Below, piece by piece: positions 1,765 through 64,000 of a DNA stretch of 64,000 nucleotides. The DNA is taken from assembly GCA_950097015.1 (NCBI GenBank), contig CATNEN010000031.1, positions 186,001 to 250,000 of the forward strand, given 5' to 3'. A model generated the notes under the pieces. That model saw only the letters and a list, made by a program, of their open reading frames with translations. It made no database searches and was not told the origin of the DNA. Made by a program: the position numbers and the translations under genes. Position 1 is the stretch's first letter. Every line of letters begins with the position of its first letter. This DNA comes from Macrostomum hystrix. Taxonomy: Eukaryota; Animalia; Platyhelminthes.

Positions 1765-4700
1765 CTGGGAAAGTGAAAGGAAAGAAGTTAGTTATAGAAG
1801 ATATTTTTATATGAATTCAGCAATGAAAAGAGTAAATAAAGTAAATAATTGGAGTATTTCCAATTACATCAATAAGAAATGAAATGACAGAAATAATGCT
1901 CTCATAAGAATAAGCGCACTTGCCTGATCCGGCTCTGACCGTGGCTTAGGCAGGCCGTAGGCAGGCAGCTCGGATCCTCCCATGGTCTCCAGCAAGTTCT
2001 CCAGCTGCCGCAGCACCTCGGATTCGGCAGCTTCGGTGCTGTAGCCCTCGTGCAGCAGGTCGCCAGCCATCTCACTGGAGAACTCGCGCCACAGCTTCGG
2101 TGGATCGCTAGGGTCACCATGGGTTAGAATAGCCGCGAAAAGCCGGCGCAGAGCTGCTGGCAGCCGCGTCTCCGCAGCCTCGCGCATGCACAGCTGCCAG
2201 TGCTTGTCGTCTTCCAGCAGCCCTCTCGCCTGGCAAGCGGCCTTGAAGGTCGGCTGTAGGACGCCATCAACAGTGCGCAGCGCCTCGAATGACGTCGGGC
2301 CGCGCACGTTCACCAAGAGCAGGCGCAGGTAGAAACAGTCGCCCATCCGAGGGCTGACTGTGTAGATCCGGCCGATATTGCCGGTCGTCAGAACGCCAGC
2401 TGGCTGACCGGCAGTCTCTCGGCCGCGACCTGCGCGATGCCAGGTGTGCGCCCTTTTGTCCCAGGTGAAGTGCCGGGGCACCTCTTGGTAGAGCAGGCCG
2501 CGGGCGACTTCATCTTGGCGACAGAGCTGGCAAGGTGTATGAATGGGTCATGATATGAATTATTATAGTAAAAAAACGGAGTAATGTTGATTAACTCGAA
2601 GCATTCTAGAATAAGCATTGCCTACAAAGTACACAGATATAAGCAGAAGCAACAGTTGGCTGAAAGACTTGCATCAAAGAAGGCGGTCAGAGTCGTGTCT
2701 TTAGGCCGAGCAGCAACAGCCTGGGCCGTCTCGCGAGTGAAAAAGACCCGCTGCTCGTCCTTCAGATGGACGGCGAGTCTTATCACAGGGGGGTATCGGC
2801 TGTGTACTTCAAAGCCCAGGATCGTATTGACCGCTTCCATTGGACCGATGTACCTGCCCAGAAGGTAGTCCTTGATCTCGTCAACCGTCTTGCCGTGCGC
2901 CGACTGACCGACAGTAGGGGCAGCAGTGCTGGCTGACACAGATGCAGCCTCTTGTCGGACTTGATAGGCAGCCATGTCGCTACCCTTGGTGATGTATTTA
3001 ACGACATACTTGATCGCCTTGACTGTCGCGCAGATCTCGACATTAAGGTGACAGCGAAACTCGCGCAGCAGCGCTGGGCAGTACGGAACCACCCAGCGGT
3101 TGTCGAAGGTGAAATTCGCCTTCTGACCGCCGCGCAGCTTGGCCATCTTTGTCACCGAAAAGCCGCCCAACTCGACAGATCTGCGGCAGTAGTGCGGGTA
3201 GCCGTCTTCTTCAATCCTAGTGGCTGCTAGGAATGCCCTCGGGTAGCGTTTGCTGCAGACCCCGTTCTCCATGCACGGCGCCGCCGGGTTGAGCTGCTGG
3301 CCACACGGACCATGCAGCAGATTCTCGGCGACCAGCTTGTGCAAGTCCGCGTCGGCGACTGGGTCCGGGATCTCGGCGCTGATGATTGAGTCGTACTGGT
3401 CCGGCTTCAGCTTGTCGGCCAGCCACAGCAGAGCGTGCACGTGGGGAAGACCTGTTTTATTTAATAATTTTTAGTGCGGAATCACGGATTAAATATTGAA
3501 TAACCTGTACTGTATTACACGCCAATTAGTAAATAAACTGCTTATATTTCACTTAATTATAAGAACATATCTTTGCCCCTACCTCGCTTCTGGTACTCGA
3601 GGGCACAGACTCGAGCCAGCGTGTCCCCGAACAGATTCTTCAGCCTGTTGAGGAAGGCCTTCTTCTTCAGCTCGAACACCCGGGCGGTGATGTCCGGCCG
3701 ATCGACGGCAGTCTGGCCCGGAAGCAGCTCAGCCAGAATCTCGGGCCACTTGGGGTTACACGTCATCGTCAGGAACAGGTCTGGGCGGCCATAGGCGTGA
3801 ACGTATGCCATGGCATCCTGCTGACGCTCAAGACGGTAACGTGGGCCTCCGACGTAGCTGGAGGTCAGGATGATATGCTTCCCGACTTCTTCCGGGTTGC
3901 CGTCGTCCTCGTGCAGCGCGTCTCGGAGACCGCGAAGACTCTCGGACTGCAGGTCTTTCTGGTGCTGCCGAATGAAGCTGAGGCGCTCGGATTCGATCTT
4001 GGCAGCCTGGTCCACCAGGTACTGCTGGAAGAGCCGGCGACCGTACAGCAGGCTGTTGAACTGGCCTGGCCGCACCTGAATCATGAAGGCGTAGAACTTC
4101 ATGTTGGTGATGCCGCGATCCTGCTTGAGCCCAATGTGCCAGCCGTCCTCACCGAAGGGGAATAGGAGCACATACTCCAACGGATCATAGGAGCGGTGGG
4201 TCTCGTAGATATCTTGCAGGCCTGCGAATGAGTAAAAATAGAATTACGAAGTACTAAGGAAATAATCAAGAATCTGGAAAAGAATTAGCTCTAGGGGAGA
4301 AAGAAATTTTGCGGCTCCTATAAATTAATTGCAGCTATTTCATAAAAGCCATAATTGCAGTAAATTAACAATGTGGCTGTCGATGCCATAGAACTCACCA
4401 CCATCTCTCAGACGCAAGATCACATCCCGTCGCTGCGCCTGGATTACGCCTTCATCATCGCCAAGGTCCGTTAGGATGCCAACTTCACTGCACTCGGGCA
4501 AGTTGAAGCGCCGGACATGCTCCCCAGATGGGCGGGCATCTGAGTTGATCACGACCTTGGCGTTCTGCAGCTGCGGATCGCTGCGCAGCAAGTCGACTGC
4601 GGACTTGAAGCTGCGCACGTAGCTGTTGCAGTCGTGCAGAGTTGCCTGCAGTTCCGCCAGCAGACGGCTATTCAGCCCGGTGGCCCACTGTAGTCGAGTT

Positions 4701-6348
4701 TGCAGCTCCTCGTCTACAAAAAAGACCTGGCAGAACCGAGCCGGGTCCCCCGGGTTCGGCAACAGGCTGCCGATCCGATGGTGCATCTGACCATGGAGGA
4801 TGAAGCTCGGGTTCCAGCCGGGCTGCTCTCGCTGTGCGGCACCGAGAGATGTCATGTGGAGGGCGCCGTTGTACTTCCGGATGTCCTTGAGGAACTGCGA
4901 GCTGTCCGGATGCTCGCCAGTCAGCAGTCGCTTGAGGACATCGGGCGGATCACGGCGCGGCTCCAGGTGGGTCTGCCGGTGGGATTTAAAAAATTCCTCA
5001 TCTTAAACAGGTTATAAAAGTTACGGTATGGCAATCAGTAAACAATCAGTAAAAAACTAAAAAATGTAGCACTTGCATGCTCTTGCTAGGGTGGGTATTC
5101 ATGAAGTGTCTAAAGCTTCATGGCATTGATAAAGTAATCAACAAAATGATCAATAAAACTGATTAATAAAAATTGGACTCACCTTGCCAGAGTGGCAGCA
5201 GATGCTGGCTGGCTCGTCATTCCAGCGTAGCGCGCCGCAGTGCGGACACTGACGGTCCATGCGGCCGAGGACATGTGGCTGGTGTGCCAATTCCAGCAGT
5301 CTGAGAAGCGAAAAACGGAAAATTTAAATGTGTATCATTTTATTAAAGATGCTGAATGTGGATATAAACTCGTTTTAAGCTAGGAGCCTTGTACATAAAG
5401 GTTGTAATGTATGGGCTAGAAAAATGTACATAAAAATAAAAATAACTAATAGTACTTATCATAGAATATGATACAGAGAAAGTATTGATGTACATTGTAA
5501 AATAATAATGACTGAAACGCCTACCTGTCTCGGCGCCGGTCTGCTTGCGCATGCAGACGCAGATCGTGCTCATCAGCGGCCTCAGCCGTGCGACGCTGAC
5601 TCTGTCGCTGTCGCTGCATGTCAAGACGAAGCACGTGGACCGTCTCCGATTCACTTGCGCGGCATTCCGCTGTGTGCTGCCGGTCTAGCTCGCGGCGATT
5701 CTGGCGCTCGGCCTCGCCCTCAGCTGCGCGGTCTTCAGCTGTGCGCAGCCGGTTCTGCTCGAGGCGATGCTGGCGCTCGGCCTCGCCCTCAGCTGCGCGG
5801 TCTTCAGCTGTTCGCAGCCGGTTCTGCTCGAGGCGATGCTGGCGCTCGGCCTCGCCCTCAGCTGCGCGGTCTTCAGCTGTTCGCAGCCGGTCCTGCTCGA
5901 GGCGATGCTGGCGCTCGGCCTCGCCCTCAGCTGCGCGGTCTTCAGCTGTGCGCAGCCGGTTCTGCTCGAGGCGATGCTGGCGCTCGGCCTCGCCCTCAGC
6001 TGCGCGGTCTTCAGCTGTGCGCAGCCGGTTCTGCTCGAGGCGATGCTGGCGCTCGGCCTCGCCCTCAGCTGCGCGGTCTTCAGCTGTGCGCAGCCGGTTC
6101 TGCTCGAGGCGATGCTGGCGCTCGGCCTCGCCCTCAGCTGCGCGGTCTTCAGCTGTGCGCAGCCGGTTCTGCTCGAGGCGATGCTGGCGCTCGGCCTCGC
6201 CCTCAGCTGCGCGTCTTTCTGCATGGCAAAGCCGATTCTGCTCCAGGCGTGCTGCATGCTCCTCTGGTGTCTCGGAGTCCCTCCGCTTCTTGGCACCAGA
6301 TGCAGCGCGTGTAGAGCGGGACAAATTGCCTCGACCGCGTTTAGGCAT
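1..6348 (-). CDS. Helitron Rep/helicase (RepHel) transposase, 9 exons, about 1650+ aa, last few codons cut by the window edge
   Basis: Exons inferred by hand: 6348-5525, 5300-5183, 4972-4399, 4221-3583, 3451-2673, 2526-1924, 1764-1463, 1315-928, 734-<1. All splice phases are mutually consistent and I saw no in-frame stop. Motifs: Zn finger CPHCGALRWNDE..ICCHSGK; HUH motif EYQKRG|LPHVHALLW; catalytic tyrosines KYVVKYITKG; Walker A DAPGGTGKT; Walker B IIVWDEAPM; GDFRQLLAV; FAMTIHKSQGQSL; HGQLYVALSR. Confidence 0.93.
2673..4221 (-). other. Rep (HUH/Y2 rolling-circle initiator) domain of RepHel
   Basis: YGRPDLFLTMTCNPKWPEI, EYQKRG|LPHVH, HGPCG, DNRWVVPY, HLNVEIC, YVVKYITKG are the standard Helitron Rep motifs. 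Confidence 0.92.
5525..6273 (-). repeat. 69-bp coding tandem repeat = 23-aa STPR-like repeats (about 11 units, 7 near-identical)
   Basis: The DNA period is 69 bp (e.g. gaggcgatgc at 5761 and 5830). The peptide unit is EGEAERQHRLEQNRLRTAEDRAA, flanked by degenerate units ETPEEHAARLEQNRLCHAERRAA and ESETVHVLRLDMQRQRQSQRRTA. Confidence 0.85.
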
Positions 6349-7958
6349 TAGTACAGAGAAAATATAAAAAATAAAAATAAATTAGAAAAGTGAAAATTGA
6401 GATGCGTTTGAAACAATCCGGCCAAATGTGGATCTGTGGTAGCGAAATAAAGCGTGACTTTAAATGAAGCAATTAGCTGTCCCGTGCCTGCAGCTTTGCG
6501 CCTCTAAATCTCCACCTCTCTACACCAAGTGTACAAACTTCGCTTTGATTAGTAAAACCGCTGCCTAACCAACCAATCAGCGGAGAGTTCTCTATGGACT
6601 AAATTTTATCTTATCTTCAATGTACATACAGACAATCGATTTAGTTTATTTTTCAGGCTTGGCCGATGACTATGCACGAAAAGGTGTGAATTCTTCATTG
6701 CGTCTCTTGGGTATCCGATTTTATTTTTTTTAAAACACCCCGTGCGATCTTGCGTGAATGTACAGTCATTTCTATTCAATTCAGAGAGTTCAGACCTCAG
6801 TGTCGAAACTGACTAACCAAAAACTCCTCACCCAATGATGTCTGAAAGTAGCAATGTGCGTAAACCGCCTTTTGTCCGACTAAACTGTTGAAAACAATTC
6901 AAAATTGACCAATTTTTCTTTAGCTACCATGCCCAGAATCTTCAGAATTAAAATAGACGACAACTTTCGGATAAGATTGAGGGGCTAGAAATCATATCGC
7001 GCGAACTCCATCAACTTTAAATTAAACCCCACCCGTTAAAACAGGTGAAGTCCGAGCCATTAATATTGACGACAGCCAGTTCTCCGGGCCCCGGTCAGTC
7101 AGAGGTGCGAATTTCAATAAATAAAATTCAACAGCCCGCCTTTGAGAATAGGAATGTGTGAAACTGTATTGTGGCAAATTCTCTCTCCTTAGCAATCTCG
7201 CCGAGACACTGTACACTCAGCTGAAAGCATTGCAAAAGTATAAAAACTTTATTTGCCCTTGGTATCCCCAATTTTCGGAATTCAGCAATGAAATTTATAT
7301 CTCTGGATTTAGAACTTCAAGTTCTCTCCAGCAGTACAAATTTTATCCACAAATCTTAAAAAAGCAAAATAATATTCTCAGTTGAAATTTCTGCAAAGGG
7401 CAGCCAGTTTAGTAAGCACATTCTTCTCCGCCTACACTGAGAGGCCCGCAAATTTTATCAATTGAATTTTAACCCAGCCAACTCTGCCCTGCCCATTGTA
7501 CGCACTTCAATATTGAACAAATCAGACCCCTCAATAGAAATAACTCGCGGCACCCTCTCTCCGCCAATACACAGAGGCAGTTAGAATGTGCGTACGGCAA
7601 CCTCTCCGCCCCATTTTTTTTCAAACCGACTGCCAACCCTCCACTGGAGAGAAAATACACTAAACAGATAGGCACAAAATGTTGACGCAACTCATTTAAC
7701 CGAGGCCAATTTCATCACAGCGGGAAGGACATTTGCCTACTATATACTACTTAATAGCCTTTCTGCTTTTTTGAGGATCATAGAATTTGAAATTTCAGAA
7801 TTAAAATAGCCTATAGCCTTCCTCGGAAAATTTCCCATTTTCCCATATAAGTTTCAACGCTGAGTTGCCAGTATTCTAGGAGGAGATGTCGAACTGACAC
7901 ACACACACACACACAGACACACACACAGACAAACAACACGTGAAAATTAGTATATTTA

Positions 7959-51083: not shown

Positions 51084-54000
51084 ACACGTGAAAATTAGTA
51101 TATTTACGAGCTAAACTCCTCCTCCGGAGGAGGTTGAGGGGAGAGAACTCCCATCGCCTCATCTCCCATCGCCTCGTCTCCCATCGTCTCATCTCCCATC
51201 GCCTGATCTCCCATCGCCTAATCACCCTTTGCCTCATCTCCCATCACCTGATCACCAATCGCCTCATCTCCTATCGCCTGATCTCCCATCGCCTAATCTC
51301 CCATCGCGCCACATCTCCCATCGCCACATCTCCCATCGCCTCATCTCCCATCGCCTCGTCTCCCATCGTCTCATCTCCCATCGCCTCATCTTTCATCGCC
51401 TCATCTCTCATCGCCTGATCTCCCATCGCCACATCTCCCATCGCCTCATCTCCCATCGCCTCGTCTCCCATCGCCTCATCTCCCATCGCCTGATCTCCCA
51501 TCGCCTCATCTCACGTCGCCACATCTCCCATCGCCTCATCTCCCGTCGCCTGATCTCCTATCGCCTGATCTCCTATCGCCTGATCTCCAATCGCCTGATC
51601 TTACCCCGCCTGATCTCCCACCGTCTCATCTCCCATCGCCTCATCTCCCATCGCCTCATCTCCCATCGCCTAATCTCCCATCGCCTGATCTCCCATCGCC
51701 TCATCTCCCATCGGCTGATCTCCCATCGGCTGATCTCCCATCGCCTCATCTCCAATCGCCTGATCTCCCATCGCCTAATCTCCCGTCGCCTGATCTCCCA
51801 TCGCCTAATCTCCCATCGCCTAATTTCCCATCGCCTGATCTCCCATTGCCTGATCTCCCATCGCCTCATCTCCCATCGCCTAATCTCCCATCGCCTGATC
51901 TCCCATCGCCTAATCTCCCGTCGCCTGATCTCCCATCGCCTAATCTCCCATCGCCTAATTTCCCATCGCCTAATCTCCCATCGCCTCATCTCCCATCGCG
52001 GCTCCGATCGCCTGATCTCAAATCGAGTCAGTTCTTTTCAAATGTTAAAAAGCAAAAGCACAATTCACAGTTGAAATTTCATTGCCTTTAGCGCAAAGGG
52101 CAGCCAGTTTTTTAGTAATAAGTACATTCTTCTCCGCCTACACTGAGAGGCCCGCAAATTTTAAAATTATATTTTAACCCAGCCAACTCTGCCCTGCCCA
52201 TTGTACGCACTTCAATATTGAACAAATCAGACCCCTCAATAGAAATAACTCGCGGCACCCTCTCTCCGCCAATACACAGGGACAGTTAGAATGTGCGTAC
52301 GGCCACCTCTCCGCCCCATTTTCAAACCGACTGCCAACCCTCCACTGGAGAGAAAATACACTAAACAGATAGGCCGAAATGATAGCGCAACCACTTTAAC
52401 CGACTCCAGTTTTCTCAGCTCAAAAGAAAAAAGTGTCCAGAGAAGGTTATGAAATCATTTTTCTGCTTTTTTGAGGATCTTAGAATTTGAAATTTCAGAA
52501 TTAAAATAGCCTATAGCCTTCCTCGGAAAATTTCCCATTTTCCGATATAAGTTTCAACGCTGAGTTGCCAGTATTCTAGGAGGAGATGTCGAACTGACAC
52601 ACACACACACAGACAAACAACACGTGAAAATTAGTATATTTACGAGCTAAACTCCTCCTCCGGAGGAGGTTGAGGGGAGAGAACTCCCATCGCCACATCT
52701 CCCATCGCCACATCTCCCATCGCCATCGCCTGATTTCCCATCGCCTCATCTCCCATCGCCTCATCTCCCATTGCCTCATCTCCCATCGCCTCATCTCCCA
52801 TCGCCTCATCTCCCATCGCCTCATCTCCCATCGCCTAATCTCCCATCGCCTCATCTCCCATCGCCTAATCTCCCATCGCCTAATCTCCCATCGCCTGATC
52901 TCCCATTGCCTGATCTCCCATCGCCTCATCTCCCATCGCCTAATCTCCCATCGGCTGATCTCCCATCGGCTGATCTCCCATCGCCTCATCTCCAATCGCC
53001 TGATCTCCCATCGCCTAATCTCCCATCGGCTGATCTCCCATCGCCTCATCTCCCATCGCCTAATCTCCCATCGCCTGATCTCCTATCGCCTAATCTCCCA
53101 TCGCCACATCTCCCATCGCCACATCTCCCATCGCCTCATCTCCCATCGCCTCGTCTCCCATCGCCTCATCTCCCATCGCCTCATCTCCCATCGTCTCATC
53201 TCCCATCGCCTCATCTCCCATCGCCTAATCTCCCATCGCCTCATCTCCCATCGCCTAATCTCCCATCGCCTAATCTCACATCGCCACATCTCCCATCGCC
53301 ATCGCCTGATTTCCCATCGCCTCATCTCCCATCGCCTCATCTCCCATCGCCTAATCTCCCATCGCCTCATCTCCCATCGCCTCATCTCCCATCGCCTAAT
53401 CTCCCATCGCCTCATCTCCCATCGCCTCATCTCCCATCGCCTCATCTCCCATCGCCTCATCTCCCATCGCCTCATCTCCCATCGCCTCATCTCCCATCGC
53501 CTGATCTCCCATTGCCTGATCTCCCATCGCCTCATCTCCCGTCGCCTGATCTCCCATCGCCTCATCTCCCATCACCTGATCACCCATCACCTCATCTCCC
53601 ATCGCCTAATCTCCCATCGCATCATCTCCCATCGTCTCATCTCCCATCGCCTCATCTCCTATCGCCTGATCTCCCATCGCCTAATCTCCCATCGCCTCAT
53701 CTCCCATCGCCTCATCTCCCATCGCCTGATCTCCCATCGCCTCATCTCCCGTCGCCACATCTCCTATCGCCTGATCTCCTATCGCCTCATTTCTCATTGC
53801 CTCATCTCCCGTCGCCACATCTCCCATCGCCTGATCTCCCATCGCCTGATCTCCCATCGCCTCATCTCCCATCGCCTGATCTCCCATCGCCTGATCTCCC
53901 ATCGCCTGATCTCCCATCGCCTCATCTCCCATCGCCTCATCTCCCATCGCTTCATCTCCCATCGCCTCATCTCCCATCGCCTCATCTTCCATCACCTGAT

Positions 54001-56927
54001 CACCCATCACCTCATCTCCCATCGCCTAATCTCTCATCGCATCATCTCCCATCGTCTCATCTCCCATCGCCTCATCTCCTATCGCCTGATTTCCCATCGC
54101 CTAATCTCCCATCGCCTCATCTCCCATCGCCTCATCTCCCATCGCCTGATCTCCCATCGCCTCATCTCCCGTCGCCACATCTCCTATCGCCTGATCTCCC
54201 ATCGCCTCATTTCTCATTGCCTCATCTCCCGTCGCCACATCTCCCATCGCCTGATCTCCCATCGCCTGATCTCCCATCGCCTCATCTCCCATCGCCTGAT
54301 CTCCCATCGCCTGATCTCCCATCGCCTGATCTCCCATCGGCTCATCTCCCGTTGCCTGATCTCCCATCGCCTGATCTCCCATCGCCTGATCTCCCATCGC
54401 CTCATCTCCGATCGCCTGATCTCCCATCGCCTGATCTCCCATTGCCTGATCTCCCATTGCCTGATCTCAAATCGCCTCAGTTCTTTTCAAATGTTAAAAA
54501 GCAAAATAATAATTCACAGTTGAAATTTCATTGCCTTTAGCGCAAAGGGCAGCCAGTTTTTTAGTAAGTACATTCTTCTCCGCCTACACTGAGAGGCCCG
54601 CAAATTTTATCAATTGAATTTTAACCCAGCCAACTCTGCCCTGCCCATTGTACGCACTTCAATATTGAACAAATCAGACCCCTCAATAGAAATAACTCGC
54701 GGCACCCTCTCTCCGCCAATACACAGGGACAGTTAGAATGTGCGTACGGCCAACTCTCCGCCCCATTTTCAAACCGACTGCCAACCCTCCACTGGAGAGA
54801 AAATACACTAAACAGATAGGCACAAAATGTTGACGCAACTCATTTAATCGAGGCCAATTTCATCACAGCGGGAAGGACATTTGCCTACTATATACTACTT
54901 AATAGCCTTTCTGCTTTTTTGAGGATCATAAAATTTGAAATTTCAGAAATAAAATAGCCTATAGCCTTCCTCGGAAAATTTCCCATTTTCCCATATAAGT
55001 TTCAACGCTGAGTTGCCAGTATTCTAGGAGGAGATGTCGAACTGACAGACACACACACACACAGACAAACAACACGTGAAAATTAGTATATTTACGAGCT
55101 AAACTCCTCCTCCGGAGGAGGTTGAGGGGAGAGAACTCCCATCGCCACATCTCCCATCGCCACATCTCCCATCGCCACATCTCCCATCGCCATCGCCTGA
55201 TTTCCCATCGCCTCATCTCCCATCGCCTCATCTCCCATTGCCTCATCTCCCATCGCCTCATCTCCCATCGCCTCATCTCCCATCGCCTCATCTCCCATCG
55301 CCTAATCTCCCATCGCCTCATCTCCCATCGCCTAATCTCCCATCGCCTAATCTCCCATCGCCTGATCTCCCATTGCCTGATCTCCCATCGCCTCATCTCC
55401 CATCGCCTAATCTCCCATCGGCTGATCTCCCATCGGCTGATCTCCCATCGCCTCATCTCCCATCGCCTGATCTCCCATCGCCTCATCTCCCATCGCCTCA
55501 TCTCCCATCGCCTCGTCTCCCATCGCCTCATCTCCCATCGCCTCATCTCCCATCGTCTCATCTCCCATCGCCTCATCTCCCATCGCCTAATCTCCCATCG
55601 CCTCATCTCCCATCGCCTAATCTCCCATCGCCTAATCTCACATCGCCACATCTCCCATCGCCACATCTCCCATCGCCATCGCCTGATTTCCCATCGCCTC
55701 ATCTCCCATCGCCTCATCTCCCATCGCCTAATCTCCCATCGCCTCATCTCCCATCGCCTCATCTCCCATCGCCTAATCTCCCATCGCCTCATCTCCCATC
55801 GCCTCATCTCCCATCGCCTCATCTCCCATCGCCTCATCTCCCATCGCCTCATCTCCCATCGCCTCATCTCCCATCGCCTCATCTCCCATCGCCTCATCTC
55901 CCATCGCCTAATCTCCCATCGCCTGATCTCCCATCGCCTGATCTCCCATCGCCTAATCTCCCATCGCCTAATCTCCCATCGCCTAATCTCCCATCGGCTC
56001 ATCTCCCATCGCCTCGTCTCCCATCGCCTCATCTCCCATCGCCTCATCTCCCATCGCCACATCTCCCATCGCCATCGCCTGATTTCCCATCGCCTCATCT
56101 CCCATCGCCTGATCTCCCATCGCCTAATCTCCCGTCGCCACATCTCCCATTGCCTGATCTCCCATCGCCTAATCTCCCATCGGCTGATCTCCCATCGGCT
56201 GATCTCCCATCGCCTCATCTCCAATCGCCTGATCTCCCATCGCCTAATCTCCCATCGCCTCATCTCCCATCGCCTAATCTCCCATCGCCTGATCTCCCAT
56301 TGCCTGATCTCCCATGGCCTCATCTCCCATCGCGGCTCCGATCGCCTGATCTCAAATCGACTCGGTTCTTTTCAAATGATAAGAGCAAAAGCACAATTCA
56401 CAGCTGAAATTTCATTGCCTTTAGCGCAAAGGGCAGCCAGTTTTTTTAGTAAGTACATTCTTCTCCGCCTACACTGAGAGGCCCGCAAATTAAAAAATTA
56501 TATTTTAACCCAGCCAACTCTGCCCTGCCCATTGTACGCACTTCAATATTGAACAAATCAGACCCCTCAATAGAAATAAATCGCGGCACCCTCTCTCCGC
56601 CAATACACAGGGACAGTTAGAATGTGCGTACGGCCACCTCTCCGCCCCATTTTCAAACCGACTGCCAACCCTCCACTGGAGAGAAAATACACTAAACAGA
56701 TAGGCACAAAATGTTGACGCAACTCATTTAATCGAGGCCAATTTCATCACAGCGGGAAGGACATTTGCCTACTATATACTACTTAATAGCCTTTCTGCTT
56801 TTTTGAGGATCATAGAATTTGAAATTTCAGAATTAAAATAGCCTATAGCCTTCCTCGGAAAATTTCCCATTTTCCCATATAAGTTTCAACGCTGAGTTGC
56901 CAGTATTCTAGGAGGAGATGTCGAACT

Positions 56928-56971: not shown

Positions 56972-58853
56972 ACACGTGAAAATTAGTATATTTAGAGAGA
57001 GACGAGAAGATAGAGAGAGGAAGAAGAAAACATACAAACATACAAGATTTTCATTTTTAGTATATAAGAAGATTTTCATTTTTAGTATATTAGAAGAAGT
57101 TTAGGTTCGAATAAAAATAAAAGAAATAGATCGAGGGAACATTTGCGATAGGTAAATCAAGTAACTAGGCAATGATCTATTTGGGCACTGAGCCATGGTG
57201 TTAAAAGTGGTTAGAACATGGGTATTTTGAATTTAGCATTCAGCATCTTGGTAATTGCAAAGTGGGGTTAAAAGAGAGATAGAAATAGAAGTAGAAAAAA
57301 ATATTTTTACAGTTTGTGTAAAAACAATATTTTAAGTATAAATATTTCTGTAATTTTATAGAAAATTTTATATTTCGGTAGAATAATGATAATTTGCGTC
57401 TTTTAGTTCGATGCGCAAATTACTCTACTAGCAGTAGTCGGCTTTACGAAAAGTATGCTTTCCGCTAGAATACGTCAGGATATTGTGAGTATAAATATCG
57501 GAGTCTTAATTACAGGTGTATCTAACCAATGAGACGAAGTTAAGCCGATATACTGGCCCAGTGTTTGTGGTTCACTGGTACCTGTGGTAGCTTGTATAAG
57601 CAGCTTCAGGGAACGTCCCACGTCTCGGTGCGATGATGACATCTAGAAGTCTGACCCAAAGGATTACCTGGATGGCTTAGTGTCTAGTGCCGGGACTTGT
57701 TATTATTTTTTCCACTTTTTGCCAAACTAAAGAGCAAGCGCAACATGAGATAAACTGCTGCAGATGTTGGGTGCTGTGTGGTGATTGTTTTTTGGTTTCT
57801 GTTGCAGCAACAGCTGCCTCTTTTTAGTTTGTCCTGCCTGGACCCCTGGGCGCTGGTGTAGCAGCAGCGATTCTCCTCTCCAGGATTTCCCAGAGGTGGT
57901 GTAGGACAGGCATTCTGGACCCCGGGTTTATCCTAATCGGATCAGGGCGCCTCTCTAGGTTGTGGATTTTAGCCTTGCAGGCTTTAAGGAGCCAGCGGGT
58001 CCCTAGATCATCAATCCTGTTCGCTACCAGGGGCATCTGGGCATGCTCATGCAAGTAGCTGGTGGAGATGTAGGATGGGATCCCATAGAAGATTCTGAGG
58101 GCAATGTTTTGAATTTTCTGAAGGTCACTCTTGTTTCCCAGGCTTAGGATTGTTAGAATGGGTGCTCCATATGTCATGGTGCTCTCCACGTAAGCCTGGT
58201 ATAGCATTTTCAGAGTGTCGCTCTTCAGATTGGTCTTTTTTGAAATCTTGCTAAGGCACATCACCTGCGCTCTGCAAGTGTTGATTTGTGATTTCACGTG
58301 CTCATTAAGTCTCAGGTTAGTGTCCAGCTTTATGCCGAGGAACTTAACTACATCGCAGTTTTGAATTTGCACAGTTCCCAGGTGGAGTTGGGGCCGTTTG
58401 TCCTGGCACCCTACCCTGGGTTTGTTGCAATTGAAGGTTATGGCCTGGCTTTTTCCGGCATTGATTTTGATGCCCTGCACGCCGCACCATTTATGGACTT
58501 CATCCAGGTAGCGCTGCAGGTTTTTCCTGAGCTTAACGAAACCTTCCGTCGACGCCCAGATTGCCATGTCGTCGGCGAACTGGCTTCGTTCTACTCCAGG
58601 TGTTTTTGGGGTTGGCATGGTGCTCACAAGAGCAGATAGAGGAGTGGGCTGATGACTCCACCCTGGGGGACGCCAGCCAATTGAGTTTAAACGACTGGCT
58701 GAGGGCTAAGTTAACCCTCACTAGGACCAACCTGTTCCAGATGGCTTTTTAGCTTCCGCGCAATGATTTTTTCAAAAACTTTGCCTAGGCAGGATGTTAG
58801 GCTGATTGGTCTGTATGAGTTTGGGTCATCTGGGGGTTTGTTAGGCTTTGGTA

Positions 58854-59986
58854 CACCTTTTCCCGTTCAATTTCAACAAATCTGCGCTGCAATTTAGACA
58901 ACTTGACATTCATTTTCGACACTCTATTTTTATACCGTCAGTTGGACGTTCAAATTAGACAAAGCTGACTTCAATTTAAACAGCAGATATTCGATTTAGA
59001 CAGTGGATATTCAATCTAAACACTTCCTCATTGAGAGCGATTTGTCTATGGTAAAAATTCTAGTTCTGAGACAAAGCACATATTCAATTTAGACACGCTC
59101 AGCTTCAGACCCTTAAATTGCTTTCCTGTCGCCTCTGCTTCTGACTTTCGGAGAGAGAATTGGAGAGACTAATGTACATTCTGTAAGATACATGTACTCA
59201 GTTTATTGTCTATGGTAAGATTGAAAACCGAGATTAAGACTGTAAAGGAAAATGATTTCTGGCCTTGTGGCATTGAGTATGCCGTCGTCCCTTTGATGTT
59301 CATCAATGCCGCCAAATGCAGGAAGTCCTCGCCGTTGTTATGAGCATCCAGCAGGCGCGCTCGATCCTGATTCGTGATTCGCACGTACGGGCCGCGGCCA
59401 TCAACGTCGCTTCCGGTCGCTTCTGACTCAGACTCTGACTCCGGTCCGTTCACCTCTTCCTCCATGTTCGTGCGTTAGATTACAGATAGACAGATATTCT
59501 TCACGAAAGAAGCAATTCTCAGAAGTAGCCTTCACTCTTGTTTAACGACCGCCGTTTTATGTGCTAAATTCAATGCCACAAGGCCAGAAATCATTTTCCT
59601 TTACAGTCTCAATCTCGGTTTTCAATCTTACCATAGACAATAAACTGAGTACATGTATCTTACAGAATGTACATTAGTCTCTCCAATTCTCTCTCCGAAA
59701 GTCAGAAGCAGAGGCGACAGGAAAGCAAGGGTCTGAAGCTGAGCGTGTCTAAATTAAATGATGATTGTCTAAATTGAATATGTGCTTTGCCTCAGAACTA
59801 GAATTTTACCATAGACAAATCGCTCTCAATGAGGAAGTGTTTAAATTGAATATCTGCTGTTTAAATTGAAGTCAGCTTTGTCTAATTTGAACGTCCAACT
59901 GAAGGTATAAAATTAGAGTGTCGAAAATGAATGTCAAGTTGTCTAAATTGCAGCGCAGATTTGTTGAAATTGAACGGGAAAAGGTG
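58854..59986. mobile_element. Non-autonomous foldback DNA transposon (probably IS630-Tc1-mariner) with about 420-bp TIRs and a TA TSD
   Basis: Termini CACCTTTTCCCGTTCAA...TTGAACGGGAAAAGGTG are flanked by TA (58852-58853, 59987-59988). Removing the element restores the RT frame atg-cTA-cca (M-L-P-K-P). The inverted arms are 58854-59276 and 59570-59986. Confidence 0.9.
59277..59465 (-). pseudogene. Truncated N-terminal HTH-like remnant of a putative transposase
   Basis: YVRITNQDRARLLDAHNNGEDFLHLAALMNIKGTTAYS looks like a Tc1/IS630-type DNA-binding HTH start. The frame then runs into the TIR. Confidence 0.5.
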
Positions 59987-61576
59987 TAGCATCACTACTA
60001 CTGCCTTTTTCCAGGGGCTGGGAAAGTGGCCTTGTTCAAAACAGGCGTTGAACAGACTGGTTATACGGGTCACTGAGACGTGTTTGAGACCACGTTTGAG
60101 GGCACTCTTGGGGATCTTGTCGAGCCCTGGGGCACTATCCTCCCTCAGGTGGGCAAGCTCCCAAGTGACGTCCTCGAACTTGATTGGTGCCTCTAAGGGG
60201 AGCAGTGGAATCCTGCTGTCCGGCTTAGAGGGATAGAGCAGCCTGAGCTGGGAGTATTTGTTAACCGTCTCAGCATAATCAGGGCTGGTGGTCGGGACAG
60301 GGCGCATCTTGGCATCCAGCGACTCCGCAAGAATATTTGCCTTGTCTTGGTCGGTAAAGGCCTTTATGGACCCAGAGGTCAGGGTGGGTATGGTGTTACC
60401 CTTCTTCTGTCCCATTAGAACCTTTATATCCCGCCAAAAGTTTTTGACTTCTTGATTTTCACTTTTTTCAACCAGTTTCTCGCACATTTTAGTGTGTTTA
60501 CGCTGTTTGAAATTTTCGATATCTTTGCGGATTTGTTTGGTCAGCCTATTTGCACTGATCCGGTACGAATCCTCTCTAGAACTGTGAAAGAGTCTGCGGA
60601 GCTTCCTCCTCTCCTTGATTTTGTCCACGATGTAGAGTGGTAGGGGTGAGATCCGTTTCCTCAGAGGAACTGCATACGCAATCGCTCCCTGGATGGCCTC
60701 GGTTAGATATCCTGCCTCAGCATCTAGATCCTGCGGGGTTTCCAAGGGAGGGACCCAGGGATCCAGGAGCTTTTGGCTAATGTGGGATTTGAAGGCATCC
60801 CAGTTTGCTTTAGTATAATTTCTGGGGGCATCTTGATCATTCAGAAGGGGAGACTTAAGTCCCAAGGTGACTATGATTGGAAGGTGGTCACTATCCAGGT
60901 CCTGCCCTACGCAGAAGTTGGTGATGAGGGGGACGAGTGCCTCTGAGGCTAGTCCAAGATCCAGCACGTTCCGTGAGATCACTCCCCCCTTGCTTGCAAT
61001 TCTTGTGAAGTCCCCTACCTGGTTTAGAACGGTTGGGGTTGGTTCATCTGAGCAGAGCCAGTCGTAGAGTTGCTGACCCGCTCTATTACTCCTACTTTCT
61101 CCCCCCAGGAAGCCGTGCCTGGCATTTAAGTCACCAAGGACCAGGCTGTGCCTATGAGAGAAGAGGGATCGGAGAAAGTCAATGTTCAAGTGATCTGTAG
61201 CCGGTGACCTGTAGACAAGCGAGAGACGGATGGAAGGACTGCTGTCTTCGCACGGATCAACTGTGCAGGTGAGTGCCTCATGATTGTTGTCAGTAAGAAT
61301 ATTAACACCAGAGACCTTAATGCGCTGTGAGTGAGCAAGTAAGAGACCCCGCTTTGAATCCGGGATGTCAAATCTAACCAGGGAGTACCCCGGGATTGAG
61401 CAAGGTTGGGTATTTTTTAGGATCGTTTCCGAGAAGAGTGCAATATCAATTTCATTCTCCTGGATCCATTGTGTAAGTTCTTTGATTTTAGGTTTAATTC
61501 CTCGGCAATTTAAGTGGGAGATTTTCACTCCTGAGACTTGTTGTTCTTGGTTGTCCGTGTTTTGCCTACCGAACAT

Positions 61577-63543
61577 TTAAGCTATATCAATGCAGTGGCC
61601 TTCCGGTGCCCCGCGCAAGCTGCTCGAGACCGCCCTGTCCATCGCATAGAGCAGCATTGACTGCGTACTCTCTAGAGAGGCCAGGGGGTCCTGAGGAGCC
61701 TGCAGGAAAACCATGAGGACCTCTGCTAGGGCGCGCGAGAGAGCAGTGACCAGCCCACTCACCTGTTTCTTGATCTCCTCAGCTACAACATCGGCAGTAC
61801 GGCGTGGAGCGGGCGGTTGAGCAAGGTTCGCGGCGATCTGAGTGACCGGGCGCCACTGGCCAGGCGGCTCGGGTACATTTGGCCAGAGCGTGCTCTTCAT
61901 TGTCCGGCAAGCCAGGTTGGCCTAGTCGTCAGCCTCATCGCCTTCCGGCTTCTCAACGTCCTCCAGGACGGACTGGAGTTGCGAGGTCGGCGGTGCAACC
62001 GCCTTTGGAACTGTGGCCGCTGCTGCTGCTGTGAGTGCCGCTGCCGCCTGAAGCTTGGCCGCCTCTTCGGTCGCCCGTTGGTGCTCGGCGGATGCGACTT
62101 TGCAGGCCTTGCTAGTTGTGCGGTGGCGCTCGCAGCAGTTGGCGCACAGCGGGTCAGCAGTGTAGCTGGTGAAGGCATGCGGCCCAGCGCAAATGCGGCA
62201 TTTCTGGACACTCTGGCAGCCCGATGATCGGTGACCAAACGCCTGGCAGCGCTGGCATTGTACTGCTCGCATCGGGCGGGCCGATTTGCTGTGCTCACAG
62301 CTAAAGGACATGAAGTCCGTCCTGATGCCGTGCTGGACGCAGCTGTCGGCGTCTCCTGGTAAGGACAGAAGACACGCAGCATCTGTGTCGGCTTGCCGGT
62401 AGTTTTGGCTACTATGCGGTGTGCGCTGGAGAGTTTCAGGTGCATGTCTTCCCGCATCACTCGGACGAACTCCGCCGGCTTGACATTAAGTGGCACGTCA
62501 CGGACGACGAAGCTGGGCTCGTTACGGCGCTGCCCGGCTTGGGCTGGAGCTGCACTGGATGTCATCGGTTGCCTGGCTACTGCTAGACGCCGCGACACCT
62601 GCTGTTCTAGGAGCAGCGGATTCCTGAGCACGCCCTGAAGGAATGTGTTAACGTCCCTCGGCGCCTCTGGGAATACGAGGTAGCTGTTATTTCCTGTTGA
62701 GCGGACATTTACGGCCCTCGCGTTGCCCTGGAAATTTGATTGTAGCCAGGAGACAAAGAGCAGCTGGTCGTTCGCTGCCTTCGGCGCCACAGTGAACACC
62801 ACAGGCGGAATTGCCGCTAGGGCCCACTGGCGGACTGGCTGATCGGTCGCCCACCTCGTCGCCAGGTAGGCGAACGACGGTGGCGCCTTCGGAACCGTTG
62901 AGACCTCTGGTGCTGCCTCTACCACCGCCGCCGCCGCCGCCGCCGCTGCCGCGGTGGCTGAGGTGTCTGAGGTGTCAGACGTCGCTTCAGCCGTTGCCTT
63001 TGCTAGGGGACTCTTGACGCCGAGAGGCTCTTCTGCTTGGCGCTTACGGTTACGGTTGTCCTTTAGCTCCGCGGTGACACGGAATGTTAGCGACACTCGG
63101 GCTCCCTGCTGCGCATGCACCGCTGGCACGGCGTGTTGCATCTTGCGCTGGCAGGCTCCGGCCATGGTGATCAACGAGCCAGGCAGCGTGTCGAACTTAT
63201 AAATGACGTTATGGGTGCGCTTGTCCCGCAAGCAGAACGTCCTGGAGGCGCCGAACGACACCGTGGCGATGGTCGGATTTGTCCCTAGCTCCGGCTCATC
63301 TTCAGAGTGGTAAGGAATATTGTCATCAGCGTCTTGATAAAAGTTGACCAGACAGCTGTTGAATATTGGAAAGTCAATGCCCGACTCATCCACCAGGTAG
63401 TCGCGAATCGCTAGCAGCGTCGGGTGCCAGTCGTTGTTCGCAGCTAGAGCGACTCCTGAGTAGGAGTATGCGGGGCCAATCCAGTGGTCAAGCCTTCTCT
63501 CGCTAGGTCGGTGCCGGATGGCCTTGGGCAGTAGCTCAGCCAT
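61577..63543 (-). pseudogene. LINE ORF1: N-terminal AlkB-like dioxygenase + Gag-like region + zinc knuckles; frameshift at ~62370 and in-frame TAG at 61922-61924
   Basis: The 63543 frame gives AlkB and then FVVRDVP...QMLRVF. The shifted frame gives CQRCQAFGHRSSGC, CRICAGPH and CANCCERHRTTSKAC and continues past a TAG to TAA at 61577. Confidence 0.82.
63075..63543 (-). other. AlkB-family 2OG-Fe(II) dioxygenase domain (ALKBH2/ALKBH3-like)
   Basis: YSYSG; FNSCLVNFYQD..D.IPYHSEDE; IATVSFGASRTF; LPGSLITMAG..Q...QHAVP; RVSLTFR. This gives the Hx(D/E)...H iron triad and the RxxxxxR 2-oxoglutarate motif. Confidence 0.9.
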
Positions 63544-64000
63544 GAGCTGCTCGTAGACTATGTCTGCGCAGTTGGCCAGGGCAATTTCATCCGCGTTAAA
63601 ACTTATGTATTTCTTGCTACAAAAAACGCATTTAAAAAACTTTTTACCGTATGTTTCTAGAAAAAAAGATCGCTGCTACATCATATATAATACAAAGCTT
63701 TCAGAATCTTACACAAGATCTTGAAATTTGTGCATTTGTGTAAATCTTGCACAAATCTTGTGTGACGAAGAACTTTGTCAAGGCTAATATACGAGTAGCT
63801 AAGCTAGTATTATACATTTCACTTGTCTTTCTGGACGGATAGAACACAACAAGGGAATGGGGGCGAAAAGGGGATAGTAACCTAATTAAAGATAGAAACT
63901 ATAGAATAAGCGACTTATACACTATACAAGGTTGTATTACGTCGAATTCTGCAGCTAATGCCAACTGCCCCCCCCCGACTTCCGACAGACACTTATGAAG

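What the first reader, a model, noticed from the sequence alone, without database searches (positions are those of the whole stretch)
61577..63600. LINE retrotransposon whose ORF1 is fused to an AlkB-type nucleic-acid demethylase domain
Seen: one uninterrupted reading frame runs from 63543 through a clear ALKBH2/3-like domain (NSCLVNFY, HSEDE, VSFGASR, QHAVP, RVSLTFR) and an Ala-rich linker into the Gag-like ORF1 body. That body is followed by zinc knuckles and APE-RT. Established: AlkB enzymes oxidatively remove m1A/m3C (some m6A) from ssDNA/RNA, and several plant RNA viruses (e.g. Alpha-/Betaflexiviridae, Closteroviridae) carry AlkB in their replicase. Commonly described LINE ORF1 accessory domains are RRM, zinc knuckle, PHD and esterase; I do not recall AlkB among them but cannot check. 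Inference: ORF1p coats the element RNA in cis, so the fused AlkB could strip RT-blocking methyl lesions or host silencing marks from its own RNA or cDNA, i.e. a retrotransposon counter-defence.
Basis: partly seen in the sequence, partly recalled or inferred. Interest (0 to 1): 0.9.

Follow-up and report, generated by a model that had tools for sequence, protein, structure and literature searches.

The report
LINE retrotransposon carrying an ALKBH3-like demethylase
This is a dead copy of a jumping gene (LINE) whose RNA-binding protein is fused to an ALKBH3-type methyl-removing enzyme; many intact, conserved relatives in this flatworm-like genome and in Macrostomum lignano show the enzyme belongs to the element, which I found described nowhere for LINEs.

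Summary
Confirmed. Window 63584-57652 (minus strand) is a dead, 5'-truncated copy of an APE-type LINE. Its ORF1 starts with a genuine ALKBH3-like Fe(II)/2OG dioxygenase domain (Pfam PF13532 E=1.5e-20; AF2 pLDDT 96; TM 0.88 to human ALKBH3). An Ala-rich linker joins it to two RRMs and three CCHC knuckles, followed by APE-RT.

It is not a host exon. The genome holds at least 78 AlkB matches, including at least 6 divergent LINE families with intact AlkB-ORF1 plus ORF2, dispersed or in tandem. The host ALKBH3 gene lies elsewhere and is only 37-47% identical. The same fusion occurs in Macrostomum lignano proteins and in other SRA assemblies.

AlkB is the most constrained part of ORF1 (dN/dS about 0.07 in two subfamily pairs). 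HxD...H and RxxxxxR are kept in the LINE families of this genome that I examined; the window's HSE is a private D-to-E change.

The most likely role is cis demethylation of m1A/m3C on the element's own RNA or cDNA; this is untested. I found no publication describing AlkB in a LINE. The precedents are plant RNA viruses and an orchid Gypsy element. First-stage readers flagged other copies in this genome (s1-258390, s1-310525).

The parts
57652..63584 (-). Whole element copy: 5'-truncated, decayed LINE (AlkB-ORF1, then APE-RT ORF2, then 3' UTR)
   Evidence: blastn against the 98% copy L031 and tblastn with the intact family L033. DNA homology to L031 starts at 63584 and ends at 57652.
63073..63582 (-). 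ALKBH3-like Fe(II)/2OG dioxygenase (AlkB) domain, lacking about 9 N-terminal profile positions because of the 5' truncation. Metal triad is H-x-E...H here (private D-to-E change); 2OG-binding R-x5-R is present.
   Evidence: Pfam PF13532 E=1.5e-20. AF2 pLDDT 96.1. Foldseek top hit human ALKBH3 8jnk, TM 0.88. Motif table.
62878..63072 (-). Basic then Ala-rich low-complexity linker between AlkB and the ORF1 body
   Evidence: Translation; alignment of seven ORF1s.
62368..62877 (-). ORF1 body in frame with AlkB: two RRM-like modules (the second is cut short by the frameshift)
   Evidence: Alignments A2 and A5. AF2 model of the homologous L033 segment has two beta-alpha-beta-beta-alpha-beta units. 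Foldseek top hits are all tandem-RRM proteins.
62347..62368 (.). Frameshift zone inside ORF1 (family frame changes here)
   Evidence: tblastn HSPs of L033 ORF1 switch frame between 62368 and 62347.
62102..62257 (-). Three CCHC zinc knuckles. The second ends in Y instead of C in this copy.
   Evidence: ORF 62311..61922 translation; comparison with L045 and other families.
61922..61924 (-). Premature in-frame stop codon in ORF1
   Evidence: ORFs 62311..61922 and 61900..61577 are in the same frame, separated by this stop. The L033 ORF1 HSP runs through it.
61577..61900 (-). Conserved C-terminal tail of ORF1 up to its natural stop, which directly abuts the ORF2 ATG at 61576
   Evidence: translation; homology to the C-terminal segments of L033 and L045.
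59986..61576 (-). ORF2 5' part: APE endonuclease (about 60872-61513) and the N-terminal part of RT
   Evidence: Pfam PF14529 1.1e-10 and PF03372 3.1e-06. tblastn to L033 ORF2 aa 61-585, 53% identity.
58854..59985 (.). 1.13-kb foreign insertion interrupting the RT; absent from the sister copy L031
   Evidence: blastn: window 59986 and 58853 are contiguous in L031. The 98-aa ORF 59169-59465 has no Pfam family.
57824..58853 (-). Rest of RT and the ORF2 C-terminus, with a deletion of about 240 bp near 58735 and a frame change
   Evidence: Pfam RVT_1 1.2e-05; blastn and tblastn.
57652..57823 (-). 3' UTR. The element ends ...TTTGGGTCA with no poly(A) tail; L031 has the same end.

Best explanation
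The window holds a dead, 5'-truncated insertion of an APE-type LINE. In the family's intact members, ORF1 encodes a disordered N-terminus, an ALKBH3-like Fe(II)/2-oxoglutarate dioxygenase, an Ala-rich linker, two RRMs and three CCHC knuckles. That is a 'type I' LINE ORF1p with an added enzyme. ORF2 encodes APE plus RT. The AlkB module is an old, vertically inherited and selected part of a whole group of LINE families. These occur in this genome (a close relative of Macrostomum lignano), in M. lignano, and in other sequenced samples. Shown: the fusion, its multi-family distribution, the ALKBH3-type fold, the conserved catalytic residues and strong purifying selection. Inferred mechanism: ORF1p binds the element's own RNA in cis. 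The tethered dioxygenase then oxidatively removes Watson-Crick-face methyl groups (m1A, m3C; the ALKBH3 substrates on single-stranded RNA/DNA) from the template RNA and/or first-strand cDNA. These lesions would otherwise stall reverse transcription or translation. The logic is the same as that proposed for AlkB domains in plant RNA virus replicases. My odds: a real, selected, catalytically competent TE-borne AlkB, about 0.95. Substrate is the element's own RNA/cDNA m1A/m3C, about 0.5.
For: Domain and fold: Pfam PF13532 is found in the window and in six intact families, E from 1e-18 to 1e-29. The profile of the TE domains hits human ALKBH3 at 144 bits, ALKBH2 at 98 and E. coli AlkB at 32. The AF2 model has pLDDT 96 and TM 0.88 to ALKBH3-ssDNA structures; ALKBH5 reaches only about 0.7. 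Copies: there are 78 AlkB matches in the genome. Intact ORF1 (781-1123 aa) is followed by intact APE-RT ORF2 (950-1153 aa) in at least 6 families. At least 7 copies of the L033 type have both ORFs open. Copies share discrete termini in different flanks. Catalytic residues: HxD, the distal H and RxxxxxR are present in the six intact families and in most copies scanned in this genome. Selection: dN/dS of the AlkB part is 0.072 (L033 vs L035) and 0.069 (L039 vs L024), lower than the rest of ORF1 at 0.19-0.34. Phylogeny: the TE AlkB domains form one clade with 100/99 support, containing sequences from this genome, M. lignano and Logan. AlkB and ORF2 pairwise identities co-vary, Spearman 0.82. RTs of AlkB-LINEs are 44-100% identical to each other, against 36% or less for other LINEs here. 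Every ORF1-body match examined in the genome has AlkB or a remnant of it. Host gene: the host ALKBH3 is a separate two-exon match on C7, 82-90% identical to M. lignano P0133, while the TE domains are 37-47% identical to P0133. ORF1 body: it folds as tandem RRMs plus CCHC knuckles. Other genomes: AlkB-ORF1 plus APE-RT is seen on independent contigs L045 and L048 and in M. lignano P0294.
Against: There is no biochemical or expression evidence. No RNA run was on record, and the laid contigs cannot show transcription. Substrate and target (own RNA, cDNA, host RNA or DNA) are inferred only from similarity to ALKBH3. The window copy itself is non-functional: truncated, frameshifted, with a stop codon, a D-to-E change at the metal site, and a disrupted ORF2. 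The origin of the domain is unresolved; host ALKBH3 and prokaryote-like AlkB are both possible. The pairwise-identity correlation uses non-independent pairs.
Confidence: 0.55

Rival explanations
1. Epitranscriptomic counter-defence. The TE enzyme erases regulatory marks (m6A, or deliberately installed m1A) that the host puts on TE transcripts to sequester or destabilise them. This was proposed for the orchid Gypsy ALKBH5-like ORF.
For: An LTR-element precedent has demonstrated m6A demethylase activity (PMC9289625). The same selection and conservation evidence applies as for the main explanation.
Against: The domain is ALKBH3-like, not ALKBH5- or FTO-like: 144 bits and TM 0.88 to ALKBH3, against TM of about 0.7 and 18% identity to ALKBH5. 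From general knowledge, ALKBH3's main substrates are m1A/m3C.
Confidence: 0.15
2. DNA-level repair. The enzyme removes 3mC/1mA from single-stranded TE DNA (first-strand cDNA or the nicked target), including 3mC made as an off-target product of host DNMTs that methylate TEs.
For: ALKBH3 works on ssDNA (PDB 8jnk and 8jnr are ssDNA complexes). DNMTs generate 3mC and co-evolve with ALKB2, and M. lignano keeps DNMT1/3 (review PMC9246332).
Against: The domain is fused to ORF1p, an RNA-binding chaperone, not to ORF2p, which handles DNA. No methylome data exist for this genus (PMC9246332).
Confidence: 0.15
3. Trans-acting manipulation of host RNAs (for example tRNA m1A/m3C demethylation to boost translation or alter tRNA fragments), or a purely structural, non-catalytic nucleic-acid-binding module.
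For: From general knowledge, ALKBH3 demethylates tRNA. AlkB folds bind single strands.
Against: The metal and 2OG ligands are invariant and dN/dS is about 0.07, which argues for catalysis. Covalent tethering to a cis-acting ORF1p favours a local substrate.
Confidence: 0.08
4. Artefact: a host ALKBH exon or a one-off transduced gene fragment lying next to a LINE insertion.
For: Only two copies of the window's own subfamily were found, and both are defective.
Against: There are 78 matches and at least 6 divergent intact families with the same order. The host ALKBH3 lies elsewhere. The fusion is present in other genomes. The domain is under purifying selection.
Confidence: 0.01

Closest known systems
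Human ALKBH3 (PDB 2iuw, 8jnk, 8jnr)
   Same: The closest solved relative by profile (144 bits, E=3e-41) and by fold (TM 0.88, 35% identity). Same HxD...H triad and RxxxxxR.
   Different: ALKBH3 is a stand-alone host enzyme. Here the domain is the N-terminal module of a LINE ORF1p. The hairpin that reads R-E-D in ALKBH3 aligns to a basic R-H-R/K in the TE domains (alignment). Activity is untested.
AlkB domains in replicases of plant RNA viruses (Alpha-/Betaflexiviridae, Closteroviridae)
   Same: A selfish RNA-templated replicator carries its own AlkB, proposed to repair methyl damage in its genome (as summarised in PMC9289625).
   Different: Those are RNA viruses of plants, with the domain inside an RdRp polyprotein. 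Here it is an animal retrotransposon, with the domain fused to the RNA chaperone. I did not test the phylogenetic relation to the viral AlkBs, because no viral sequences were in hand.
Phalaenopsis Ty3/Gypsy elements with an ALKBH5-like ORF (PMC9289625)
   Same: A retrotransposon-encoded AlkB-family dioxygenase retained over subfamily diversification.
   Different: That is an LTR element in a plant, with a separate extra ORF of the ALKBH5-like m6A eraser type. Here it is a non-LTR element in an animal, fused in frame to ORF1 and ALKBH3-like.
Type I LINE ORF1p (RRM(s) directly upstream of CCHC knuckles; I, Jockey, R1, Tad1, L2 clades; PMC4120745)
   Same: The ORF1 body here is RRM-RRM-CCHCx3.
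   Different: None of the five ORF1 types or their described variants (RRM, CCHC, coiled coil/CTD, PHD, esterase) includes a dioxygenase. The survey of 448 Jockey-superfamily ORF1s has no mention of AlkB or dioxygenase.
Other enzymatic or epigenetic captures by retrotransposons: DNMTs (PMC5890265), MBD (PMC6673714), SF1 helicase in TRAS/Jockey LINEs (PMC5563155, PMC6338049), ORF1 esterase of CR1/L2 (PMC3905857)
   Same: An accessory nucleic-acid or epigenetic module recruited into a retroelement protein and kept by selection.
   Different: Different enzyme class. None of them removes base methylation.

Membership tests
AlkB family, ALKBH3-like subgroup of Fe(II)/2OG dioxygenases | Double-stranded beta-helix fold with the AlkB-type nucleotide-recognition elements | tested here: met
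   AF2 pLDDT 96.1, pTM 0.90. Foldseek hits ALKBH3 at TM 0.84-0.88, ALKBH2 at 0.78-0.87, and E. coli AlkB and ALKBH5 at about 0.7.
AlkB family, ALKBH3-like subgroup of Fe(II)/2OG dioxygenases | HxD...H iron-binding triad | tested here: met
   Both His are invariant in the 60-sequence alignment and the Asp is at least 90% conserved. HxD is present in the six intact families and in most copies scanned. The window copy alone has HxE, while its 98% sister has HxD.
AlkB family, ALKBH3-like subgroup of Fe(II)/2OG dioxygenases | RxxxxxR 2-oxoglutarate-binding motif | tested here: met
   R162 and R168 (window numbering) are invariant in A4. The motif R[IV][SN][LV]T[FY]R was found in the six intact families and most copies of this genome.
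AlkB family, ALKBH3-like subgroup of Fe(II)/2OG dioxygenases | Closer to ALKBH3 than to other AlkB paralogues | tested here: met
   Profile against PDB: ALKBH3 144 bits, ALKBH2 98, AlkB 32. Trees place the TE clade among ALKBH3-like sequences, but its sister group is unresolved.
AlkB family, ALKBH3-like subgroup of Fe(II)/2OG dioxygenases | Oxidative demethylation of m1A/m3C in single-stranded nucleic acid | not testable with these tools
   Needs an enzyme assay.
APE-type LINE (non-LTR retrotransposon) | ORF2 with an apurinic-like endonuclease followed by a reverse transcriptase | tested here: met
   PF03372/PF14529 plus PF00078 in the window and in six intact families.
APE-type LINE (non-LTR retrotransposon) | Multiple dispersed copies with a common 3' end, variable 5' truncation and no LTRs | tested here: met
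   Copy lists. Shared termini in different flanks. The window copy is 5'-truncated relative to L031.
APE-type LINE (non-LTR retrotransposon) | Target-site duplication flanking insertions | tested here: inconclusive
   No obvious TSD by eye at the window copy's ends. I made no systematic search.
Type I ORF1p (Khazina and Weichenrieder classes, as in PMC4120745) | At least one RRM immediately upstream of CCHC zinc knuckle(s) | tested here: met
   Two RRM-topology units, then three CCHC. zf-CCHC Pfam matches are just below cutoff.
Jockey clade in the strict sense (or any named LINE clade) | RT phylogenetic placement with reference elements (e.g. RTclass1) | not tested
   No labelled reference RT set was available. 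ORF2 lacks RNase H. The automatic 'jockey' names on distant hits are not a test.
ALKBH5-like TE demethylases (orchid Gypsy type) | AlkB domain of the ALKBH5/ALKBH9B m6A-eraser subgroup | tested here: not met
   ALKBH5 structures match only at TM about 0.65-0.71 and 18-21% identity. ALKBH5 is not among the sequence hits at E<=0.001.

The most novel reading that the evidence does not exclude
A LINE-encoded ALKBH3-type demethylase is a required retrotransposition factor that erases damage-derived or host-installed m1A/m3C on the element's RNP. This would reveal base methylation of the template as a previously unrecognised barrier, or host restriction layer, against reverse transcription. The module would have spread by ORF1 domain shuffling into at least two unrelated LINE lineages: the RRM-CCHC group and the L040 (TAA)n-tailed group. 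It may also have reached a Penelope-like element (L050).
Probability: 0.35. Interest if true: 0.88.

Novelty: new variant of a known kind. Interest (0 to 1): 0.78.

Why it matters
LINE ORF1 proteins are thought of as RNA chaperones. The only enzymatic ORF1 module described so far is the CR1/L2 esterase. A conserved, strongly selected ALKBH3-type dioxygenase fused to ORF1p would be the first nucleic-acid demethylase reported in a non-LTR retrotransposon, as far as I could search.

It also turns a general question into an experiment: do m1A/m3C-type lesions or marks on the template limit reverse transcription and retrotransposition in vivo? M. lignano, a close relative that carries the same fusion, is a laboratory model with published transgenesis (PMC5730564, title listed).

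The finding parallels AlkB capture by plant RNA viruses and by an orchid LTR element. That would make AlkB a recurrently recruited tool of RNA-templated selfish elements.

There is a practical caveat too. Dozens of TE-borne AlkB copies can inflate ALKBH2/3 presence or copy calls in comparative studies, such as those linking ALKB2 to DNMT retention (PMC9246332).

Tried and rejected
(1) Two homologous-protein searches with ORF1 regions returned one hit each. The length filter and word index hide most relatives, so these near-blanks are not evidence of rarity. The exhaustive profile search found them.

(2) The protein-atlas search on a whole ORF1 gave no usable hit. On the L040 ORF1 C-terminal part it gave only weak leads (0.82-0.84) to SGNH esterase clusters, and Pfam did not confirm these even at E<=5. 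I do not claim an esterase.

(3) Expression: no RNA run was on record. Read laying on contigs of four runs shows only that the L033 family is present in two studies of the same organism. It says nothing about transcription.

(4) Origin of the domain: trees leave the sister group unresolved. AU tests reject neither a single clade of all TE AlkBs including L040 (p=0.33) nor a clade with flatworm host ALKBH3 (p=0.45).

(5) My first idea was that the window subfamily has a genuinely short 5' end, because two copies share the same DNA homology start. I dropped it: the L031 upstream sequence still encodes the beginning of the AlkB profile.

(6) Naming the LINE clade was not possible without reference RTs.

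(7) No TSD was seen at the window copy.

(8) N-terminal regions of ORF1 have no Pfam domain.

(9) Telomeric-repeat check of contig ends near the tandem arrays: none were found in the pieces I read.

(10) Organism names of the Logan and ENA contigs could not be obtained.
Full report
OBSERVATION. On the minus strand an open frame runs from 63543 to 61897 (548 aa). Pfam places a 2OG-FeII_Oxy_2 domain (PF13532) at residues 21-155, with E=1.5e-20 and 74.7 bits against a gathering score of 31.2. An Ala-rich stretch follows, and then a region that aligns with the ORF1 of related elements. Downstream, frame 61576..59882 carries an APE endonuclease (PF14529, PF03372), and frame 58627..57824 carries the end of a reverse transcriptase.

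ANATOMY OF THIS COPY. I compared it with a 98% identical copy on contig 1 (L031) and with an intact relative (L033).
- The window copy is 5'-truncated at 63584. L031 continues upstream with sequence that still encodes the first positions of the AlkB profile, so the ATG at 63543 is an internal Met.
- A frameshift near 62350 puts the three CCHC knuckles (62257-62102) in another frame.
- An in-frame stop sits at 61922-61924.
- The natural ORF1 stop (61579-61577) abuts the ORF2 ATG at 61576.
- The RT is split by a 1.13-kb insertion (58854-59985) that L031 lacks, and by a deletion of about 240 bp near 58735.
- The element ends at 57652 (...TTTGGGTCA) without poly(A), exactly as L031 does.
- The metal-binding Asp is Glu in this copy only. 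L031 and every other family have HxD.
- Knuckle 2 ends in Tyr instead of Cys.
This copy is a dead relic. L031 is dead as well, with an internal 1.7-kb deletion.

IS ALKB PART OF THE ELEMENT? A six-frame search of the whole 220-Mb assembly with the window's AlkB domain gave 78 matches at 28-100% identity. I fetched 14 regions. They hold six divergent families in which an intact ORF1 of 781-1123 aa carries PF13532 (E from 1e-18 to 1e-29) and is followed by an intact ORF2 of 950-1153 aa with APE plus RT.
- The L033-type family alone has at least 7 copies with both ORFs open, on contigs 3, 12, 25 and 29.
- Copies in different flanks share exact 5' and 3' termini.
- A search with the ORF1 body found no long open frame of this ORF1 type without AlkB. 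The two candidates I examined carry AlkB remnants: an internally deleted one and a truncated one.
- By RT, the AlkB-bearing families are 44-100% identical to L033, whereas all other LINEs in the genome are 36% or less.
- The host's own ALKBH3 is a separate split gene on contig 7. Its two pieces are 82% and 90% identical to M. lignano P0133, which itself scores 175 bits against human ALKBH3. The TE domains are only 37-47% identical to P0133.
This removes the 'neighbouring host exon' rival.

WHAT KIND OF ALKB. A profile of seven TE domains scores 144 bits against human ALKBH3, 98 against ALKBH2 and about 32 against E. coli AlkB. An AlphaFold2 model of the window's domain, built with a 60-sequence alignment, has mean pLDDT 96 and pTM 0.90. 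It superposes best on ALKBH3-ssDNA complexes (TM 0.88, rmsd 1.4-2.2 A, 35% identity). ALKBH5 and bacterial AlkB reach only about 0.7. Both iron-binding His residues and both 2OG-binding Arg residues are invariant across the 60 sequences, and the Asp is at least 90% conserved. The HxD, distal-His and RxxxxxR motifs were found in the six intact families and in most copies of this genome that I scanned.

REST OF ORF1. The segment after the linker is conserved among all RRM-CCHC families, M. lignano proteins and Logan contigs. Its model (pLDDT 84) shows two beta-alpha-beta-beta-alpha-beta units followed by three CCHC knuckles. The best structural matches are all tandem-RRM proteins. This is the 'type I' LINE ORF1p (an RRM directly upstream of CCHC) described for the I, Jockey, R1, Tad1 and some L2 elements (PMC4120745), with an AlkB domain added at the N-terminal side. 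No Pfam domain is found in the variable N-terminal 125-300 residues.

SELECTION AND HISTORY. Two independent subfamily pairs gave similar results with Nei-Gojobori dN/dS.

| Pair | AlkB | N-terminus | Rest of ORF1 | dS of AlkB part |
|---|---|---|---|---|
| L033 vs L035 | 0.072 | 0.34 | 0.19 | about 0.2 |
| L039 vs L024 | 0.069 | 0.19 | 0.30 | about 0.4 |

The two dead copies (window vs L031) give 0.47 on very few changes.

In maximum-likelihood trees the TE domains form one clade with 100/99 support. That clade contains all the RRM-CCHC families of this genome, six M. lignano proteins and six Logan proteins. The L040 family sits outside on a long branch. Pairwise identities of AlkB and ORF2 co-vary across families (Spearman 0.82; the pairs are not independent). 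This is as expected if AlkB has been inherited with the element since before the families split. The donor is unresolved. AU tests reject neither one clade for all TE AlkBs including L040 (p=0.33) nor a clade with flatworm host ALKBH3 (p=0.45).

OTHER GENOMES. An exhaustive HMM search of 1.84 billion representatives put the following well above the plateau of about 200-aa stand-alone AlkBs: M. lignano 'Fe2OG dioxygenase domain-containing' proteins (P0122-P0124, P0127, P0272, P0275), and long Logan proteins of 569-1012 aa. Contigs L045 and L048, from different SRA runs, carry AlkB-ORF1 followed by APE-RT. M. lignano P0294 (927 aa) has both AlkB and the ORF1 body. The sequences are therefore public but, where named, carry only generic names (hypothetical protein or Fe2OG dioxygenase domain-containing protein). 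The organism of the window is coded. The 82-90% identity of its ALKBH3 to M. lignano's suggests a close relative, and this is an inference.

MECHANISM. Shown: an ALKBH3-type domain, catalytically complete by sequence, is covalently tethered to an RNA-binding ORF1p and is the most constrained part of that protein. Inferred: LINE ORF1 proteins bind their own transcript in cis, and ALKBH3 removes m1A and m3C from single-stranded RNA and DNA. Both points are established knowledge that I did not test here. So the enzyme most likely clears Watson-Crick-face methyl groups from the template RNA and/or first-strand cDNA, where they would block reverse transcription. The same rationale was proposed for AlkB in flexivirus and closterovirus replicases (as summarised in PMC9289625).

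The alternatives are erasure of regulatory marks such as m6A, repair of DNMT-derived 3mC on TE DNA (context in PMC9246332), trans action on host tRNA, or a non-catalytic role. They are listed with odds under rivals.

One detail is worth testing. The hairpin that reads R-E-D in ALKBH3 aligns to a basic R-H-R/K in the TE domains.

NOVELTY. Full-text searches combined AlkB, 2OG-Fe or 2OG-FeII_Oxy_2 with non-LTR, ORF1, retrotransposon, retroelement and Macrostomum. They found only the orchid Ty3/Gypsy ALKBH5-like ORF (PMC9289625) and the plant-virus cases. The survey of 448 Jockey-superfamily ORF1s (PMC4120745) and an opinion article on accessory domains of retrotransposons (PMC6338049) do not mention AlkB or any dioxygenase. 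Repbase and Dfam could not be checked. I therefore rate it a new variant of known kinds (LINE ORF1 accessory domains; AlkB capture by selfish RNA-templated elements), not categorically new.

CAVEATS. There is no expression or activity evidence. Clade naming and donor are unresolved, and the taxonomic range beyond Macrostomum-like samples is unknown.

Noticed in passing
G000:C12:3.679-3.697 Mb (L034); C29:3.903-3.934 Mb; C1:13.528-13.542 Mb (L032); C39:12.722 and 12.733 Mb: AlkB-LINE copies stand in head-to-tail tandem arrays: 3, 6 and 2-3 units of about 6.5 kb, and a pair 10.6 kb apart. In the C12 array each 6.09-kb element is followed by a spacer of about 470 bp that also flanks the solo copy on C3. 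This suggests unit duplication or 3' transduction rather than independent insertions.
   Followed up: partly
L040 (G000:C1:8051500-8061499) and five more loci (C9, C11, C15, C38, C39): A second, unrelated LINE lineage also has AlkB at the start of ORF1. It is 7.0 kb with a (TAA)n tail, and two copies are 99.4% identical. Its ORF2 is only 24-27% identical to the other AlkB-LINEs, and its ORF1 lacks the RRM-CCHC body. There is a weak, unconfirmed lead to an SGNH esterase. Its AlkB lies outside the main TE clade, but a single origin is not rejected (p=0.33).
   Followed up: partly
L050 (Logan SRR19430222 contig), genes 2120-5158 and 5542-7398: A 1012-aa protein has an AlkB domain of the TE clade. 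It lies directly upstream of an ORF with weak RVT_1 and GIY-YIG matches, the domain pair of Penelope-like elements. AlkB may therefore also ride on a non-LINE retroelement, or the two are merely neighbours.
   Followed up: partly
L038 (G000:C17:36500-46000), L062 (C17:1-6000); also C42: Contig 17 is an rDNA array with a U1 snRNA gene in the intergenic spacer. The intact L038-family AlkB-LINE sits in that spacer between U1 and the SSU gene, and an identical ORF1 is found at a similar offset on contig 42.
   Followed up: partly
window 58854-59985: A 1.13-kb insertion sits inside the RT of the window copy and is absent from the sister copy. It holds a 98-aa ORF (59169-59465) with an acidic N-terminus and no Pfam family. 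Its identity is unknown.
   Followed up: partly
G000:C7:11818250-11820727 (L055, L056, L060); C10:304-308 kb (L041) and C41:369-372 kb; C38:29.65 Mb (L042): A canonical split host ALKBH3 gene, plus single-exon host-like paralogues. These are a tandem pair of 360 and 421 aa with an N-terminal CEP104-like zinc finger fused to an ALKBH3-like domain (duplicated on C41), and a 545-aa protein with a C-terminal AlkB domain.
   Followed up: partly
L033 vs L035 (G000:C3 and C25 copies): Synonymous divergence between the two subfamilies is about 0.23 in ORF1 but only 0.04 in ORF2. This suggests recombination between subfamilies (mosaic elements).
   Followed up: no
window 54959-56477: A long imperfect short-period tandem repeat is open in several frames on both strands, with extreme GC skew (-0.6 to -0.7). 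A similar skewed block lies at about 52500-54500.
   Followed up: no
L061 (G000:C12:3807000-3816999): The end of contig 12 consists of a satellite with a unit of about 26 bp (GATTCAAACTCTGGTTTAGCCAT...). No TTAGGG-type telomeric repeats were seen there.
   Followed up: no
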